Positions 563 to 16,741 of a DNA stretch of 64,000 nucleotides are shown here, piece after piece. Position 1 is the stretch's first letter, and every line of letters begins with the position of its first letter. The DNA is taken from IMG/VR virus record IMGVR_UViG_3300010389_000001, positions 62,001 through 126,000 of that record; one strand, 5' to 3'. The notes below the pieces were generated by a model that was given only the letters and a program-made list of their open reading frames with translations, was not told the origin of the DNA and searched no databases. Position numbers and translations under genes: made by a program.

Positions 563-979
563 GTGGGCAGAAAAATCGACAAATACTATAAATACCTTGA
601 GGTTGATCAGGGTAATGGTATTACGGCTTTTGGGTGGACCGATGCTGATTCTATAGATAAGAATCAAGATTATGTATTAAGCTATCCGTCTAGATCAAAG
701 AAAACTTCAGAAGAAGATCTGGAGTGGTCAAGCAAAGAAGGCTGTAGCGCAACTGCGCTTGTCGATTACGCAACTTACGTTGAGAGGCTAACTGGGGAAT
801 CTCCGCAGGGCTTCTTCGATGAGTGGGAAGAAAAAATAGACTTATACGATGAATCTAAAGAAAGCTGGAGAGAGGGATCTGCGGAGTTTATATTAAATCT
901 ATGCAGACTAATCTTGGGAGAGAAAGCTAGCTTCACACAATTTGGAAGAGTTTATAAAAGAGTCAATGTCGAAAGCTAA
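563..979 (+). CDS. Hypothetical protein
   Basis: 138-aa ORF with GGAGG RBS, tightly packed between neighbours. Confidence 0.6.
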   Translation: MGRKIDKYYKYLEVDQGNGITAFGWTDADSIDKNQDYVLSYPSRSKKTSEEDLEWSSKEGCSATALVDYATYVERLTGESPQGFFDEWEEKIDLYDESKESWREGSAEFILNLCRLILGEKASFTQFGRVYKRVNVES

Positions 980-10423: not shown

Positions 10424-11014
10424 ATGAGCCCAAAGTCGATCAGTATATTCGATACAGCCCAAACAAAGAAGCGGACGAACCGCAATAACAAGCAAAAGAA
10501 AAGTACGGCAGAAAAGCAGCGAATTGCAGATAAAGAAGCTCTGGGTAAGGCGGCTCTTCAAAAGTTAAATCCAATGGTCATCCCTCTACTTGCAGCCCAA
10601 GAAAGGCCGTCTGGATTTATCACTTCTTCAATCGATGTAATTCAGAACAATCCTCATCGTCTATCGGATAATTGGATTGAGAAGCTAAATAAGTGGGTTG
10701 ATGATGTAGCTGCCGCATCAATTTTAGAGGAGCCCGATATTAAGATCGGAGAGAGAATCGATATTGGCCCCATCATGGTAGATCGGATTATTCCTCCAAA
10801 GCTTGAATCCCAATATCCTATGCCAGCCATTATGTGCAAGGACGAAAGAGGCTGGAAGTGGTACTTTAAAACAAGTAAGGCTGGACAGTTCTCTTCTGGC
10901 GACTATATTACCTTCAGGGCAATTCCCTCCGGTCACGGAGAGGGGATTACCTTTCTGCGCAGGCCAACTAAATTGGTTAAGGTAGAAAAGAATATGGAGG
11001 AAGATAGTGATTAG
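10424..11014 (+). CDS. Hypothetical protein (beta-rich C-terminus, possibly OB-fold)
   Basis: GAGGAGG RBS, 196 aa. Confidence 0.6.
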   Translation: MSPKSISIFDTAQTKKRTNRNNKQKKSTAEKQRIADKEALGKAALQKLNPMVIPLLAAQERPSGFITSSIDVIQNNPHRLSDNWIEKLNKWVDDVAAASILEEPDIKIGERIDIGPIMVDRIIPPKLESQYPMPAIMCKDERGWKWYFKTSKAGQFSSGDYITFRAIPSGHGEGITFLRRPTKLVKVEKNMEEDSD

Positions 11015-11097
11015 TCAGGAAGGTAGATTTGATCTATCATTAAAATATAATCTTCTATATTTTTGTTTTTACAAAATTCTATAGCAGCAGCTTTTTT

Positions 11098-11150
11098 GGC
11101 TCCTATTAATTGCCTTGGGATTAATAGAAAAGCCCAACTCCCCAAGGCAG
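11098..11150 (+). promoter_or_regulatory. Structured purA leader (pseudoknot or alternative hairpins)
   Basis: CTATTAAT(11103-10) pairs with ATTAATAG(11120-27); the enclosed loop TGCCTTGGG pairs with CCCAAGGCA(11141-49). Confidence 0.55.
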
Positions 11151-11174
11151 TCATTAGAGAAAAGGAGGTGCTTT

Positions 11175-12222
11175 ATGTCCAAGCTAATCAGACTCGCAGA
11201 TGTTGTAGTTGGTTTAGCTTGGGGTTAACTACCCCGGCGATGAAGCAAAAGGGAAAATTACTGCCCAACTCGCATCAACAAGGTCAGCGTCAAACGGTGG
11301 CTCATTCTACGATTACATCGTCCGTTGGGCCGGTGGTAATAACGCAGGCCACACTGTATGGGTTGGCGGAGAAAAATTTAAGACACACTTGGTTCCATCC
11401 GGAGTATTCTATGGTGTGAAATCGATTGTTGGCCCTGGCTGTGTTTTGCACCAGGAGCACTTTAATGTGGAGCTTTCTTATCTGGAGAAGAACGGCTTTG
11501 ACCCAGGGCTGGTAAAGGTTTCTCCAAGATGCCATATTGTAACTGATGAGCACCTTGAGTATGACCGAAATAATCTTGCTAAAAAGCTTGGAACTACAGG
11601 ACGAGGAATTGCTCCAGCTTACTCTGCAAAGTTTGCAAGAACCGGAATTCTAGCAAAGGATGTTCTTCCAAGTCATATGCTGTGGGATGAGCGGCTAGAT
11701 GGCAATGTCCTATGCGAAGGAGCACAGGGCGTATGGCTTGACATTGATCATGGTCTTTATCCTTATGTAACTTCATCAACGACTCTGCCTTATGGAGCTT
11801 GCAGCGTCGGCTTTCCTCCTCAGAAGATTCGCAATATTTGGGGTGCAGCAAAGATTTATGATACAAAGTCTGGAGAGGATCCAAGATTTCCTGACTCACT
11901 CTTAGATGATCCAAAGCTTTTGAATGTTGCGAATCTTGGACAAGAATATGGCGTAACCACGGGGCGAAGAAGAAAGGTTAATTGGCTAAATTTAAATATG
12001 CTAATTGACTCTATAAATCTTTCTGGCACAACCAACTTGGTTATAAGTAAATGTGATATACTGCTTGATCTTGGAGAAGGATACTTTAATCTGTTCTATA
12101 ATGATAATATGGTGAGTTTTGCATCATTAAAGAATATGTGTGAGTTCATCACCAACGAAGTTACTTTAAACTGTCCTCTGGTAACTGAGATAAGGTATTC
12201 AAGCTCCCCTATGGAGATTTGA
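11175..12222 (+). CDS. purA: Adenylosuccinate synthetase (short form), interrupted by a 13-nt insert in the P-loop
   Basis: AGGAGGT RBS, ATG 11175 MSKLIRLADVVVGLAWG then TAA; resumes in +1 frame at 11236/11239 (G)DEAKGKI..RWAGGNNAGHT..HLVPSG..GTTGRGIAPAY..EGAQG..YPYVTSS..GVTTGRRRKVNW; 344 aa if the insert is skipped. Confidence 0.93.
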
Positions 12223-12223
12223 T

Positions 12224-13045
12224 TTGTCTAACGTAACTGTTCTTTATCACGCAGGCTGCCCCGATGGCTTTGGCTCTGCGTGGTCTTTCTACAAAAAGTA
12301 TGGCACTAAAGCTGAGTATATACCCGTTCGTCACGGAGATCTTCCTCCAGACGTTACAGGAAAGACTGTTTTTATTGTTGACTTTTCTTATCCCAGGACT
12401 ATACTGGAGGAAATGCACGCGGCAGCAGAATCGCTGACGGTAATAGACCATCACATTACTGCCCAAGAAAGTCTGCATGGCTTAGACTATTGCCACTTTG
12501 ATATGTCTCATTCCGGCGCTTATTTATCATGGGCCTTTCTCTTTGGAGAAGAAGACGTACCGCTTTTAATTAGGTATATTGAGGATAGAGATTTGTGGAA
12601 GTGGCAGCTTCCTTCTGCAGAGCAGATTTTATCTGCTATAGATTCGTATGACAAGAGCTTCTCCACTTGGGACTCTTTAAATGAGAAGCTAGATGAGCCT
12701 CATTCGAGGTCATGGTTTAAGCTGCACATTGAGGGCTCTGCAATCTTGCGCTATAACAAGCAGCTTATCGAGAGGCTGAAAAAGAAAGAGCATACAGTAA
12801 AGATTGGCGATGATACTATCCGCGCTGTAAATTCTCCATTTTTTCAATCAGAGATAGGCGCTCAATTGAGTCGCGGTGAAAAGTATGCTGCTGTTTACTA
12901 TTATGATGGAGAAAAGTATGTCTTCTCGCTTAGGTCGGACGAAGATGGAGAGAATGTCTCTGTAGTGGCCAAAAAGTTTGGAGGAGGAGGCCATAAGAAA
13001 GCTTCTGGTTTTTCGGTTATGAACATCTCTGATTTGGAAAAGTAA
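12224..13045 (+). CDS. DHH/DHHA1-family phosphoesterase (nanoRNase-like)
   Basis: YHxxCxDG, VDFS, IDHH, DRDLW, SLRS, GGGGHKKASG. Confidence 0.9.
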   Translation: MSNVTVLYHAGCPDGFGSAWSFYKKYGTKAEYIPVRHGDLPPDVTGKTVFIVDFSYPRTILEEMHAAAESLTVIDHHITAQESLHGLDYCHFDMSHSGAYLSWAFLFGEEDVPLLIRYIEDRDLWKWQLPSAEQILSAIDSYDKSFSTWDSLNEKLDEPHSRSWFKLHIEGSAILRYNKQLIERLKKKEHTVKIGDDTIRAVNSPFFQSEIGAQLSRGEKYAAVYYYDGEKYVFSLRSDEDGENVSVVAKKFGGGGHKKASGFSVMNISDLEK

Positions 13046-15009: not shown

Positions 15010-15660
15010 ATGTATACGGCCAGTTTTGTTGACCATATCAAGAATACTATATTCATCTTATTTTTTTCGATTTACTCAGCCACCTTAAGTGCTGAGGCGG
15101 CTGAGCCTTATAAGAGTTCATTTATCAAGCATGTCAGAACCGAGACCGTTATGGACAAAGTTCTGGTTATCGAGAATGGAAGCTCTAGGCTCAAAACGCC
15201 GGTCACCATATCTTATGAGGTGGGTAAGGGCGACTATATTCGACAAAAGTATACCGAAGAATATATCAAAAATAACTTTGCATTATCGCACATGATTGTT
15301 ATGGATGAGCTAAAGGGTATTGGTGTTACTCCAATCGAGTGTCGCTCTCCCTACGAGTTGCATATTTTTATCCTTCATCCAGACACAATGTACTCTTCGA
15401 ATTTATTTCAGAAATTCAGAGAAGAATATAACTACCATTATAAAATTCACGCCTTTTTTGATGCAACGGTTGAAGTAAAGGGGCACAACAATATTCTTCT
15501 ATCTGACATGGGCGACTGGGAAAATTACCAATCTATCCAGCATGAACATGCTCATTATTGGTGGCTCCGGTATTGTCTAAAGAAGCATTATCCATCTTCA
15601 GAAGACTTTGCTCGTTTGATAGAGAGAAAAGCGGAGACAACTTACAATGAATATTTTTAG
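15010..15660 (+). CDS. Putative exported zinc metallopeptidase-like protein
   Basis: N-terminal hydrophobic signal-like segment ending AEA; HEHAH motif with downstream SEDFA. Confidence 0.5.
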   Translation: MYTASFVDHIKNTIFILFFSIYSATLSAEAAEPYKSSFIKHVRTETVMDKVLVIENGSSRLKTPVTISYEVGKGDYIRQKYTEEYIKNNFALSHMIVMDELKGIGVTPIECRSPYELHIFILHPDTMYSSNLFQKFREEYNYHYKIHAFFDATVEVKGHNNILLSDMGDWENYQSIQHEHAHYWWLRYCLKKHYPSSEDFARLIERKAETTYNEYF

Positions 15661-16741
15661 GCCAGGAGACTCTCTCGAAAAGTTAGATGCCCCACCGGCT
15701 TTTGATGATGTGCTGCTTGTTCCAAGATACTCTGGGCTTGCCTCTCGATTGGAACCGAATATTAGCACTTCACTTTCCACCTCTTTCGCCTTAGAGGTTC
15801 CGGTCGTATCTTCTCCGATGGATACTGTTACCGGATCTCAGATGGCTTCTGCTATCGGCAGAGAGGGCGCAATGGGTGTGGTTCACAGGTTTATGTCTCC
15901 AGAAGATCAGGCCGGAGAGCTTCACCGTGTATCTGACTTAAATCAAGGCCCAGGAGATCCTGCTCCACTTGCCTTTGCGGTCGGAGTGGGCTCTTCTGAG
16001 AAAGAGAGATTCGATAAAGTTTATTCTCAATTTGAATCTGCCATCGATTGGGTATCCATAGACGTTGCAAACGGTCACTCTAAGTATATGGCCGAAATGC
16101 TAAGCTGGATAAAGGATCGAGTATCACCTGATACAAATATTATGGTTGGCAATGTTGCGACTGGCGATGGGTACAAGTTTCTTGCTGATCGTGGCGCCGA
16201 TGCAATTCGCGTTGGGATAGGTGGCGGAAGCATCTGTAAAACCAGAATTATGACAGGCTTTGGCGTTCCTACTCTTGCTTCAGTTGCGGATTGTTATAAG
16301 GCAAAGTTGAGCGGCAATTATAACTCGTCAATTATTGCCGATGGAGGAATCAGGTATCCATCCGATTTGGTTAAGTCTTTGGCCTTCGGGGCAGACGCAA
16401 TAATGGCTGGAAGAATATTTGCGGGAACCTTAGAGTCACCTGGCGAAACAGTTATTGTTGACGGCGTAAAATCAAAAACCTATAGAGGGATGGCGTCAAG
16501 AGAGGTTCAGGAGGACAAGCGCGGAGGCTTAAAGCCTGGAACCTGCGCAGAGGGTGTATCAACCCATATTCCAATAAAGGGTAAGGCCAGATATATTCTA
16601 GAAGAGTTCTCGGGCGGTTTGAGGTCTGCCATGACTTACTGTAACGCAAGAGATATTGCAGAACTCAGAGAGAATGTTAGGTTCATTAGAATGTCTCCGT
16701 CATCTCTCGACGAGTCTCATGCATTTGGAACAAAAGTTTAG
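15647..16741 (+). CDS. guaB: IMP dehydrogenase (IMPDH/GMPR family), without CBS domains
   Basis: [39 protein letters not shown] (catalytic Cys), IIADGGI, YRGMAS, AEGV. Confidence 0.9.

What the first reader, a model, noticed from the sequence alone, without database searches (positions are those of the whole stretch)
11098..11170. Pseudoknot or two-state RNA switch in the purA leader
Seen: an 8-bp stem CTATTAAT/ATTAATAG (extended by GGCT/AGCC) encloses a 9-nt loop TGCCTTGGG that is perfectly complementary to CCCAAGGCA at 11141-49, 13 nt before the RBS. I cannot match it to purine, ZTP or PRPP/ppGpp riboswitch consensus. Inference: an undescribed cis-regulatory RNA. Together with the hop element it would give two layers of translational control on one nucleotide-metabolism gene.
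Basis: partly seen in the sequence, partly recalled or inferred. Interest (0 to 1): 0.65.

Follow-up and report, generated by a model that had tools for sequence, protein, structure and literature searches.

The report
Leftover homing-endonuclease control hairpin before purA
The hairpin and its loop-to-downstream complement are real and conserved, but they look like the control region of a selfish homing-endonuclease gene that arrived with the ribosome-hop insert and was later deleted here, not like a metabolite-sensing switch for purA.

Summary
An 8-bp stem (11103-10/11120-27) plus a 4-bp outer stem encloses TGCCTTGGG, which is perfectly complementary to 11141-49. It is the only such hairpin-plus-loop-complement in the 232-kb phage record, and none of this length appeared in 60 shuffles.

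No Rfam family matches. The element lies inside a 223-nt insert (11013-11235) that is absent from a near-identical relative and from the closest hop-free relatives.

In two relatives the same leader sits 4-9 nt from the start codon of a divergent 283-aa homing-endonuclease-like gene (HEG), and that gene's Shine-Dalgarno sequence lies in the hairpin arm on the opposite strand. In the window only the HEG's last 28 codons remain (11014-11097).

Five diverged versions keep both helices, with three compensatory pairs; that is not significant at n=5. A.C mismatches on the + strand read as G.U pairs on the - strand. Three lineages keep the hop and the purA ribosome-binding site but have lost the leader.

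Best reading: a relic HEG control region (ribosome-binding-site-sequestering hairpin, an alternative helix, possibly an operator-like copy of the homing site). It now sits in the purA-like 5' UTR and may incidentally damp its translation. No RNA data exist for this region.

The parts
11007..11012 (+). GTG ATT, the original start codon and codon 2 of the purA-like gene. It is now stranded at the end of the upstream 196-aa gene and marks the left border of the insert.
   Evidence: The empty-site contig in run X1 joins 11012 directly to 11235 through 32 nt that read MIDLADVVVGLALGDE. The same GTGATTAG is present in L018.
11013..11235 (.). Remnant of the mobile cassette: HEG tail, bidirectional UTR, new purA N-terminus and hop insert. 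It is absent from the empty-site allele.
   Evidence: 'skips 222'. Hop-free relatives L036 and L040 have the purA ATG overlapping the upstream gene.
11014..11100 (-). C-terminal 28 codons of a deleted homing-endonuclease-like gene. The deletion junction lies at the A-run GCCAAAAAAGC.
   Evidence: BLASTP against the 283-aa L018 gene gives 23/28 identical, E 4e-16. That gene matches phrog_3339 'homing endonuclease' at 1.3e-16 and DUF7487 at 1e-22. No other copy exists in the 232-kb record.
11098..11134 (.). Hairpin P1: outer stem 11098-101/11131-34, inner stem 11103-10/11120-27, 9-nt loop 11111-19.
   Evidence: I6; -12.6 kcal/mol on the + strand, -11.5 on the - strand. It is conserved in L018, L006, L027 and L054, with one U-A to C-G compensatory pair.
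11099..11105 (-). Former Shine-Dalgarno sequence of the HEG (TAGGAGC on the - strand), buried in the P1 arm.
   Evidence: In L018, L027 and L054 the equivalent purine tract lies 6-8 nt before the HEG ATG/TTG. Predicted P(unpaired) is 0.08-0.28 in all five versions.
11111..11119 (.). P2 5' strand (the P1 loop), TGCCTTGGG.
   Evidence: It pairs with 11141-49. RNAalifold chooses this helix as the consensus on both strands.
11141..11149 (.). P2 3' strand, CCCAAGGCA. On the - strand this region is a degenerate inverted copy of the uninterrupted purA target region.
   Evidence: Two compensatory pairs: G-C to A-U in L027 and C-G to U-A in L054. The L027 version matches the hop-free purA sequence at 19 of 23 positions, with 0 of 300 shuffles as good.
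11162..11177 (+). purA-like SD AAGGAGGT (11162-69) and start codon ATG (11175-77), both supplied by the cassette.
   Evidence: The block AAAAGGAGGT-N5-7-(A/T)TGTCCA is conserved in all hop-bearing relatives of this type.
11179..11222 (+). Stem-loop in the new N-terminal coding region, directly 5' of the take-off codon (arms 11179-94 and 11207-22).
   Evidence: the repeat finder I2: 16 nt, 81% complementary. Its position resembles the 5' stem-loop of T4 gene 60 described in bioRxiv 10.1101/2022.08.31.505936.
11223..11238 (+). Hop element: take-off GGT 11223-25, in-frame TAA 11226-28, hairpin GGGGT/ACCCC 11221-25/11231-35, landing GGC 11236-38.
   Evidence: Relatives carry inserts of 11, 12, 13, 14, 32 and 33 nt (landing codon included; one further long TGA/UUCG variant, L012, was not measured) at the same codon, each restoring the WG-DE motif. 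The identical insert is seen in an independent metagenome contig, L044, and in runs X2 and X3.
11236..12222 (+). Body of the short (about 340-aa) adenylosuccinate-synthetase-family gene.
   Evidence: Pfam PF00709 at 1e-71 and phrog_1211 at 6e-58. The nearest solved structures are bacterial PurA (4m0g, 5e-52). No PurZ structure scored at 1e-10 or better.

Best explanation
The element is the roughly 75-nt bidirectional control region of a mobile homing-endonuclease/ribosome-hop cassette that inserted at the 5' end of a phage purA-like gene.

In intact copies, a 283-aa homing-endonuclease-like gene (HEG) is read leftwards from this region and purA rightwards. On the HEG (minus-strand) transcript, hairpin P1 buries the HEG Shine-Dalgarno sequence. 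The alternative GC-rich helix P2 (the upstream UGCCUUGGGG paired with the P1 loop) closes a longer hairpin, in which the same SD pairs with the antisense of the purA SD. Either way HEG translation is held down, as in the ribosome-binding-site-sequestering hairpins of T4 I-TevI and segB and Aeh1 mobE.

Many of these pairs are G.U on the minus strand, which makes them A.C mismatches on the plus strand. The structure is therefore weaker on the purA mRNA and tends to leave its SD free.

In this genome the HEG has been deleted between two A-runs, so the element is a relic that became the purA 5' UTR. Here it can still fold: P1 would form first during transcription, then the more stable P2 plus pairing of the junction U-run with the SD. 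That may incidentally lower purA initiation. It is not a ligand-sensing switch.

Shown: the sequence, its conservation, its membership of the cassette, and the HEG remnant. Inferred: which strand is functional, SD sequestration, and relic status.
For: 1. Cassette membership.
- A contig in run X1, with 2 of 102 differences in the upstream gene, joins 11012 to 11235 through an ordinary purA N-terminus.
- The closest hop-free proteins (83-84% identity) have no leader at all.

2. HEG link.
- L018 and L027 carry a divergent HEG-like gene. L018's matches phrog_3339 at 1.3e-16 and DUF7487 at 1e-22; the L027 gene is its 57%-identical homolog.
- Its ATG is 4-9 nt from the foot of P1.
- L054 and L085 carry a decayed copy.
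- Window 11014-11097 encodes the gene's last 28 residues.

3. SD in the stem.
- P(unpaired) of the HEG SD is 0.08-0.28 in all five versions.
- The RNAalifold consensus on the minus strand has 20 pairs, including the SD; the plus-strand consensus has 12 pairs and leaves the purA SD open.

4. Strand asymmetry.
- Over identical intervals the minus strand folds 2.6-5.0 kcal/mol better in all four versions computed (the L054 run failed).
- The isolated hairpin is more stable on the minus strand in four of five versions.
- The L018 closing pair and the L006 P2 end pairs are A.C on the plus strand but G.U on the minus strand.

5. Structure is conserved.
- 84.8% of cells are paired, against 30-52% when the partners are slid.
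- Three pairs show double changes.

6. Dispensable for purA and for the hop.
- L020/L023, L049/L050 and L062/L063 keep the SD, the MS(K/R) N-terminus and the hop but lack P1 and P2.

7. Precedent.
- Hairpins that sequester the ribosome-binding site, and operator-like copies of the homing site, are documented upstream of phage HEGs (PMC2988022 sections 10 and 12; PMC3014915 section 29).
Against: - No transcript data exist. No RNA run holds the region, so a minus-strand RNA and its 5' end are unproven, and no conserved sigma-70-type promoter was found for it.
- After controlling for composition the two strands score alike: z is -2.7 versus -2.2 in the window and about 0 in L018 and L027. The G.U asymmetry could therefore partly reflect A/C richness of the plus strand.
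- Covariation is not significant with five sequences (80 of 500 shuffles reach it).
- In the window and in L006, independent HEG deletions both stop right at the foot of P1. The HEG-less window copy has the most perfect P1 and P2 of all. That could mean selection on the purA side.
- In the window and L018 the predicted purA SD accessibility is as low (0.15-0.18) as that of the HEG SD.
Confidence: 0.5

Rival explanations
1. A plus-strand cis-regulatory RNA of purA. P1 forms first and leaves the SD free. The more stable P2 then forms, freeing the CUCCU/U-run anti-SD to mask the purA SD. This gives a two-state, kinetic or factor-dependent throttle on purA initiation; a partial H-type pseudoknot is another possible form.
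For: - The plus-strand MFE in the window and L018 uses P2 and pairs the SD (P(unpaired) 0.15-0.18).
- The element always sits at a fixed position before the purA SD, whatever lies upstream.
- Two independent HEG deletions (window, L006) retained P1 and P2 intact up to the foot of the stem.
- The window copy, which has no HEG, has perfect Watson-Crick helices.
- The 12-nt loop of L054 with a 6-bp P2 is sterically compatible with a true pseudoknot.
Against: - It is absent from all hop-free relatives and from three hop-bearing lineages with the same SD.
- Plus-strand folds are inconsistent between versions: SD P(unpaired) is 0.32-0.60 in L006, L027 and L054, and the alifold consensus leaves the SD open.
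- SD masking in the window relies on a U-run created by the HEG deletion junction.
- Several pairs are A.C on this strand.
- There is no Rfam match and no ligand-pocket-like conserved internal loop.
Confidence: 0.2
2. A DNA-level element: two inverted target-like half-sites (TGCCTTGGG and CCCAAGGCA, resembling the GCNTGGGG core of the purA homing site). They would act as an operator where the endonuclease binds without cutting and represses its own transcription, as I-TevI does.
For: - The L027 leader (minus strand) matches the uninterrupted purA target region at 19 of 23 positions, with 0 of 300 shuffles as good.
- In the window, CTTGGGATTAA (11114-24) resembles the take-off site CTTGGGGTTAA (11218-28) (D2).
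- Operator sites resembling homing sites lie upstream of I-TevI (proven) and of I-TevII and I-TevIII (putative) (PMC2988022 section 10).
Against: - The similarity to the target is weak in the window and L018 (p 0.05-0.5).
- The two copies co-vary with each other rather than both tracking the target, which fits base pairing better.
- The hairpin stem around them is not explained by this model.
- The specificity of this endonuclease is unknown.
Confidence: 0.12
3. An enhancer of the hop: the leader CCCCAAG (11140-46) pairs with CUUGGGG at the take-off site (11218-24) as the mRNA exits the ribosome, helping forward bypassing.
For: - 7-nt perfect complementarity (I7).
- The L027 leader is complementary to both flanks of the coding gap.
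- Pairing of exiting mRNA is proposed to drive bypassing in T4 gene 60 (abstract of bioRxiv 10.1101/2024.12.09.627546, as listed).
Against: - Three lineages carry the hop without the leader.
- The GCT/GCC difference at the take-off flank is not tracked by the leader.
- A dedicated 5' stem-loop already exists inside the coding region (I2).
Confidence: 0.05
4. Functionless debris: inverted repeats left by the cassette's origin (duplication of target sequence), conserved only because the cassette spread recently by homing.
For: - Between the window and L018, the cassette region (leader plus N-terminal coding) looks by eye more alike (roughly 85-90% nt, estimated from the sequences, not computed) than the gene body (75% aa).
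- Covariation is not statistically significant.
Against: - Three compensatory double changes, and 85% pairing across versions whose purA bodies differ by 25-35% at the protein level.
- The HEG SD sits precisely in the stem in every version.
Confidence: 0.13

Closest known systems
Ribosome-binding-site-sequestering hairpins of phage homing-endonuclease genes (T4 I-TevI, I-TevII, I-TevIII, segB; Aeromonas phage Aeh1 mobE)
   Same: A hairpin lies directly upstream of a phage HEG start codon, with the SD in the 3' arm. It is predicted to limit translation of a potentially harmful nuclease (PMC2988022 section 12; PMC3014915 section 29).
   Different: - No promoter has been mapped inside the hairpin here.
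- The region is shared with a divergent host gene, so the antisense of each SD acts as an anti-SD for the other.
- There is a second conserved helix (loop to flank).
- The endonuclease belongs to a different family (DUF7487, weak TnsA-like), not GIY-YIG or HNH.
- In the window the endonuclease gene is gone.
T4 mobA / gene 60 mobile bypass cassette
   Same: - A homing endonuclease gene sits beside a conserved enzyme gene.
- A new translational start and N-terminal extension are supplied by the insert.
- A coding gap starts with an in-frame stop right after a GGN take-off codon that lies in a stem-loop; some relatives have a UUCG loop.
- A GGN landing codon follows in most variants.
- The endonuclease is progressively lost while the bypass is kept (bioRxiv 10.1101/2022.08.31.505936 section 12).
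   Different: - The target is a purA-like gene, not the topoisomerase. That preprint calls the bypass cassette unique and reports it only in Topo2L.
- The gaps are far shorter here (11-14 nt; 32-33 nt in one clade) than the 50 nt of T4.
- The endonuclease is divergent in orientation and unrelated to MobA.
- The host gene is not split into two polypeptides.
- Actual bypassing is untested.
I-TevI operator (a homing-site mimic that mediates autorepression)
   Same: A sequence resembling the homing site lies just upstream of the endonuclease ORF (L027: 19 of 23 positions).
   Different: Binding is untested, the similarity has decayed in the window, and no promoter overlap is known.
Purine, ZTP, PRPP/ppGpp (ykkC) and 2'-dG riboswitches upstream of purine genes
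   Same: A structured 5' leader of a purine-metabolism gene with alternative pairings near the SD.
   Different: There is no Rfam match at gathering score. The best weak hit is an unrelated L31 leader (20.7 bits against a 33-bit cutoff; E 0.48). There is no conserved junction or pocket, and the element is absent from most orthologous genes.

Membership tests
Known riboswitch or leader families (Rfam 15: purine, ZTP, ykkC subtypes, 2'-dG, preQ1 and others) | A covariance-model score at or above the family's gathering threshold | tested here: not met
   There were 0 hits at gathering score in the whole window. In 10950-11350 at E<=10 only chance-level hits appeared: L31-Coriobacteria at 20.7 bits (cutoff 33), mir-186 and sR30.
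HEG ribosome-binding-site-sequestering hairpin (I-TevI / mobE type) | A hairpin immediately upstream of a homing-endonuclease start codon | tested here: met
   The foot of P1 is 4-9 nt from the HEG ATG in L018 and L027, and similarly placed before the TTG of the decayed copy in L054. In the window itself only the HEG's last 28 codons remain.
HEG ribosome-binding-site-sequestering hairpin (I-TevI / mobE type) | The Shine-Dalgarno sequence is base-paired within the stem | tested here: met
   This is prediction only. The SD (UAGGAGC, UAGGGGC or UAGAGGC) has P(unpaired) 0.08-0.28 on the minus strand in all five versions and is paired in the alifold consensus.
HEG ribosome-binding-site-sequestering hairpin (I-TevI / mobE type) | A (late) promoter inside or next to the hairpin yields a shorter transcript with a free ribosome-binding site, and the hairpin lowers translation experimentally | not testable with these tools
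   No RNA run holds the region. The host and the promoter type of this jumbo phage are unknown. A TGGACA-N17-TCTAAT match on the minus strand of the window is not conserved in relatives (read directly from the sequences).
Mobile HEG + bypass cassette (T4 mobA / gene 60 kind) | Presence/absence polymorphism, with an intact 'empty site' in close relatives | tested here: met
   The X1 contig skips 11013-11234 and encodes MIDLADVVVGLALGDE. P0002 and P0003 (83-84% identity) are uninterrupted.
Mobile HEG + bypass cassette (T4 mobA / gene 60 kind) | A coding gap that begins with an in-frame stop after the take-off codon, a take-off stem-loop, and a matching landing codon | tested here: met
   The window has GGT-TAA, the GGGGT/ACCCC hairpin and a landing GGC. 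Variants of 11, 12, 13, 14 and 32 nt land on GGN. Two (L006, L001) have AGY instead. Whether ribosomes actually bypass is untested.
Mobile HEG + bypass cassette (T4 mobA / gene 60 kind) | Endonuclease homologous to MobA (HNH) and a topoisomerase target | tested here: not met
   The endonuclease matches DUF7487, phrog_3339 and weakly TnsA_N. The target is an adenylosuccinate-synthetase-family gene.
H-type RNA pseudoknot | Two helices that can coexist sterically, each supported by covariation | tested here: inconclusive
   Each helix has 1-2 compensatory pairs, but this is not significant at n=5. In the window the 9-nt loop is fully consumed by P2 with no linker nucleotides, so full coexistence is unlikely. 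In L054 (12-nt loop, 6-bp P2) it is possible.
I-TevI-type operator | An upstream sequence resembling the homing site that the endonuclease binds but does not cut | tested here: inconclusive
   The resemblance is significant only in L027 (19 of 23 positions). Binding and cleavage cannot be tested here.

The most novel reading that the evidence does not exclude
The 75-nt region is a genuinely bifunctional, strand-asymmetric RNA device. By using G.U pairs that become A.C on the complementary transcript, one DNA segment silences the selfish endonuclease on one strand while keeping, or conditionally gating, the host purA gene's ribosome-binding site on the other. After endonuclease loss it has been exapted as a two-state translational regulator that works together with a new, very short (13-nt) ribosome hop.
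Probability: 0.12. Interest if true: 0.8.

Novelty: new variant of a known kind. Interest (0 to 1): 0.5.

Why it matters
Taken alone, the leader is a modest result. It is another probable ribosome-binding-site-masking hairpin of a phage homing endonuclease, preserved here as a fossil in a host gene's 5' UTR. It also warns against reading conserved leaders of metabolic genes as riboswitches.

Its value is as a marker. It shows that the purA 'hop' is not an assembly error or a pseudogene. The hop is one end of a mobile cassette whose life cycle can be traced across metagenomes: invasion, endonuclease decay, loss of the UTR, retention of the hop.

If ribosomes really do bypass these inserts, this would be a second, independent family of endonuclease-linked translational bypass elements. 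Until now only T4 gene 60-type cassettes in topoisomerase genes have been described. The gaps here are much shorter and naturally variable (11-14 nt, 32-33 nt), which makes them suitable for dissecting the bypass mechanism.

Tried and rejected
- Rfam at gathering score and at relaxed E-value: nothing credible.
- Intrinsic terminator: none predicted in 10600-11600 on either strand. No U-run follows the stem on either strand.
- Sigma-70 promoter: the scan found nothing in the leader. A hand-found minus-strand TGGACA-N17-TCTAAT is not conserved in relatives.
- Repeated regulatory motif: TGCCTTGGG with up to 1 mismatch occurs at chance frequency in the window. No similar hairpin-plus-complement exists elsewhere in the genome.
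- Near-identical DNA in GenBank phages: no match.
- More leader versions. A leader pattern and a looser stem pattern in IMG/VR returned only known loci or chance hits. The metagenome scan added L027 and L030. Contig look-ups added L054 and L085 only; one contig had no DNA available.
- More copies of the endonuclease: two IMG/VR scans found only the same locus and distant relatives. The window's own genome holds none.
- RNA evidence: no RNA run holds the region. Two metatranscriptomes from the study of the best DNA holder held next to none of the sampled words, and the one that was laid (X22) gave only unrelated purA-like fragments.
- Leader-to-take-off covariation: not seen.
- A reassigned TAA, or a plain +1 frameshift, as an explanation for the interrupted gene: rejected. 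Relatives have inserts of 11, 12, 13, 14, 32 and 33 nt in all three phases at the same codon, and stops are otherwise normal. No alternative code was used.
- L043, an apparent split gene: a plain frameshift elsewhere in the gene, not related.
The two coding parts were handled separately by reference.

Full report
**What is there**

The window is part of a 232.5-kb IMG/VR virus record with almost all genes on the + strand. The flagged stretch lies between a 196-aa gene of unknown function (10424-11014) and a short adenylosuccinate-synthetase-family gene (Pfam PF00709 1e-71; phrog_1211 6e-58). By sequence, that protein is nearest to bacterial PurA structures. No PurZ structure scored at 1e-10 or better, so I call it purA-like.

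The gene starts at ATG 11175 and runs 17 codons to TGG GGT. It then meets TAA (11226-28). The P-loop motif resumes at GGC GAT GAA (11236) in the +1 frame.

- the 8-bp stem, 11103-10 with 11120-27;
- the 4-bp outer stem, 11098-101 with 11131-34;
- the loop TGCCTTGGG, 11111-19;
- its perfect complement, 11141-49;
- the SD, 11162-69.

**Is it more than chance?**

An 8-bp perfect hairpin is common in this phage: 52 in the window, against 11.7 +/- 3.7 in shuffles. Only this one has a loop complement of 7 nt or more within 60 nt. Shuffles gave 0.22 such cases per window, and none of 9 nt or more in 60 trials. It is the only 9-nt case in the whole genome.

The thermodynamic signal is modest. The 91-nt + strand folds at -27 kcal/mol, z = -1.8. 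Because the 9-nt loop would be wholly consumed by a 9-bp helix, the two helices are best seen as alternatives in this copy. I call the hairpin P1 and the loop-to-flank helix P2.

**Known families**

Rfam gave nothing at gathering score for the whole window. At E<=10 around the site it gave only chance-level hits. No terminator and no credible promoter was predicted. The loop motif is not a repeated signal in the genome.

**Relatives change the picture**

Protein and pattern searches returned many purA-like loci. They fall into four groups.

(a) *Most relatives, including the closest full-length ones.* P0002 and P0003 (83-84% identity) have an uninterrupted VVVGLAWGDEAKGK, and their start codon overlaps the upstream gene. 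They have no leader and no insert.

(b) *A near-identical relative with an empty site.* A contig in run X1, with 2 of 102 differences in the upstream gene, joins 11012 to 11235 through 32 nt that read GTG ATT GAC ... = MIDLADVVVGLALGDE. So 11013-11235 is an insertion, and the old start GTG ATT survives at 11007-12. This contig is short (161 nt, 27 nt on the right side), which is a limitation. Its decoded sequence is nevertheless exactly what an empty site should be.

(c) *Five diverged versions that carry the leader.*
- The window, with L044 at 99% identity from an independent metagenome.
- L018.
- The L006 type.
- L027/L030.
- L054/L085.

In L018 and L027 a 283-aa gene is read divergently from the leader (L027 holds 237 aa before the contig ends). 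The L018 gene matches phrog_3339 'homing endonuclease' at 1.3e-16, DUF7487 at 1e-22 and weakly TnsA_N; the L027 gene is its 57%-identical homolog. Its ATG lies 4-9 nt from the foot of P1. Its SD (AGGGG or AGGAG) is the complement of the P1 5' arm, 6-8 nt before the ATG.

L054 and L085 hold decayed copies. L006 keeps only about 15 nt of the gene's 3' end. The window's minus strand at 11014-11097 encodes its last 28 residues (23/28 identical, E 4e-16). The deletion joined two A-runs. No other copy exists in the 232-kb record.

(d) *Three lineages with the hop but no leader.* L020/L023, L049/L050 and L062/L063 keep the cassette-type SD, the MS(K/R) N-terminus and a hop, but have lost P1 and P2.

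The leader is therefore one component of a mobile cassette: the homing-endonuclease gene (HEG), a bidirectional UTR, a new N-terminus and the hop. The cassette decays stepwise. This is the life history described for the T4 mobA/gene 60 cassette (bioRxiv 10.1101/2022.08.31.505936, section 12).

**Structure conservation**

On the five-sequence alignment A2, the P1+P2 model has 84.8% of cells paired, against 30-52% when partners are slid by 1-3 columns. Three pairs show changes on both sides:
- U-A to C-G in P1;
- G-C to A-U in P2 (L027);
- C-G to U-A in P2 (L054).

With n=5 the shuffle control is not significant (80/500), so covariation is suggestive only. RNAalifold picks P2 as the consensus helix on both strands.

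**Which strand?**

Several observations lean towards the minus (HEG) strand.
- Over identical intervals the minus strand folds 2.6-5.0 kcal/mol better in all four versions computed; the L054 run failed.
- The isolated hairpin is more stable on the minus strand in four of five versions.
- The extra pairs are G.U on the minus strand and A.C on the plus strand. Examples are the L018 closing pair, the UUUUCU:GGAG extension of P1, and the ends of P2 in L006.
- The HEG SD is predicted to be paired in all five versions (P(unpaired) 0.08-0.28). The purA SD ranges from 0.15 to 0.60.
- The minus-strand consensus has 20 pairs and includes the HEG SD paired with the antisense of the purA SD. The plus-strand consensus has 12 pairs and leaves the purA SD free.

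There are counter-points.
- Composition-controlled z-scores are similar on both strands.
- Two independent HEG deletions end exactly at the foot of P1.
- The HEG-less window copy is the most perfectly paired of all.
- In the window and L018 the purA SD is predicted to be as masked as the HEG SD.

**A further clue**

The minus strand of the L027 leader (GTTTACCTTGGGGCGTTG-AGCC) matches the uninterrupted purA region (GTTTAGCGTGGGGCGATGAAGCC) at 19 of 23 positions, with 0 of 300 shuffles as good. In the window the resemblance has decayed.

So the P2 3' strand descends from an inverted copy of the presumed homing site. [quoted passage not shown] I keep it as a rival, DNA-level explanation.

**Mechanism proposed**

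On the HEG transcript the SD is buried in both conformations. In the first it lies within P1. In the second, the GC-rich P2 closes a long hairpin in which the SD pairs with the CCUCCUUUU antisense of the purA SD. This would keep nuclease synthesis low. Ribosome-binding-site-sequestering hairpins of this kind are shown for mobE and I-TevI and implicated for segB, I-TevII and I-TevIII (PMC3014915 section 29; PMC2988022 section 12).

In the window the HEG is gone, so the element is a relic in the purA 5' UTR. It may still reduce purA initiation (SD P(unpaired) 0.15). That masking, however, depends on a U-run created by the deletion junction, so it looks incidental.

I put about 0.5 on this explanation and about 0.2 on a genuine plus-strand purA regulator. 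The remaining weight goes to an operator, a hop enhancer, or no function.

**Limits**

- No transcript data exist for this phage.
- The host is unknown.
- All structural statements are predictions.

Noticed in passing
window 11220-11241; L001, L004, L006, L012, L020, L027, L049, L054, L059, L062 at the equivalent codon: The 'hop' insert sits after the same TGG GGT codon pair in many relatives and takes at least nine forms:
- TAACTACCCC + GGC or GGA (13 nt);
- TAAATCCCCA + GGA (13);
- TAAAACCCC + AGT (12);
- TAAACCCCA + GGC (12);
- TAAATACCCCA + GGT (14);
- TAAACCCA + GGC (11);
- TGA plus a UUCG-loop hairpin and an A-rich tail + GGT (32);
- the same type + AGC (33);
- a further TGA/UUCG form + AGC in L012 (length not measured).

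Each starts with a stop codon inside or next to a short hairpin, and each would restore the WG-DE motif. All three phases occur. This argues for bypassing rather than a frameshift, a code change or an assembly error. Two forms lack a GGN landing codon. Bypassing itself is untested.
   Followed up: partly
window 11179-11194 / 11207-11222: A 16-nt, 81%-complementary inverted repeat lies inside the cassette-supplied N-terminal coding region. It ends one base before the take-off codon, so it is positioned like the 5' stem-loop of T4 gene 60.
   Followed up: no
L018 2011-2862 (-); L027 2-712 (-); window 11014-11097 (-): The cassette's endonuclease has an N-terminal Cys/His-rich motif (FxCKICNYxCNxNYSGTHLKR) and belongs to DUF7487/phrog_3339, with a weak TnsA-like N-terminal endonuclease match. 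It is rare in IMG/VR: only this locus and distant giant-virus-bin relatives were found.
   Followed up: partly
L027 about 745-770 (minus strand) versus L036 about 1528-1551: The leader contains an inverted, uninterrupted pseudo-copy of the purA P-loop coding region (19 of 23 positions identical). It could be an operator or decoy for the endonuclease, or a trace of how the cassette formed.
   Followed up: partly
window 12224-13045 and 15647-16741: A DHH/DHHA1 phosphoesterase (phrog_4771, 2.9e-72) follows purA directly. An IMPDH/GMP-reductase-family gene (PF00478, 1.6e-101) lies 3.4 kb downstream. Together they suggest a nucleotide-remodelling module. Whether it makes a modified base (PurZ-like chemistry) is open, because the protein is closer to PurA than to solved PurZ.
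   Followed up: no
window-wide: Perfect 8-bp hairpins with 5-14-nt loops are 4-5 times more frequent than in shuffles: 52 in the window against 11.7, and 205 in the genome. This suggests many structured intergenic signals that were not examined.
   Followed up: no
L043 about 880-900: The apparent split of a purA-like gene into 64-aa and 268-aa ORFs is a simple frameshift downstream of the P-loop in a hop-free relative. It is probably an assembly error or a pseudogene and is unrelated to the cassette.
   Followed up: partly
Read laying contigs X2 (starts 11166) and X3 (starts 11142): Logan contigs from two other metagenomes that carry the identical hop break off inside the leader. This fits either assembly breaks at the inverted repeats or presence/absence variation of the endonuclease among co-occurring strains.
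   Followed up: no
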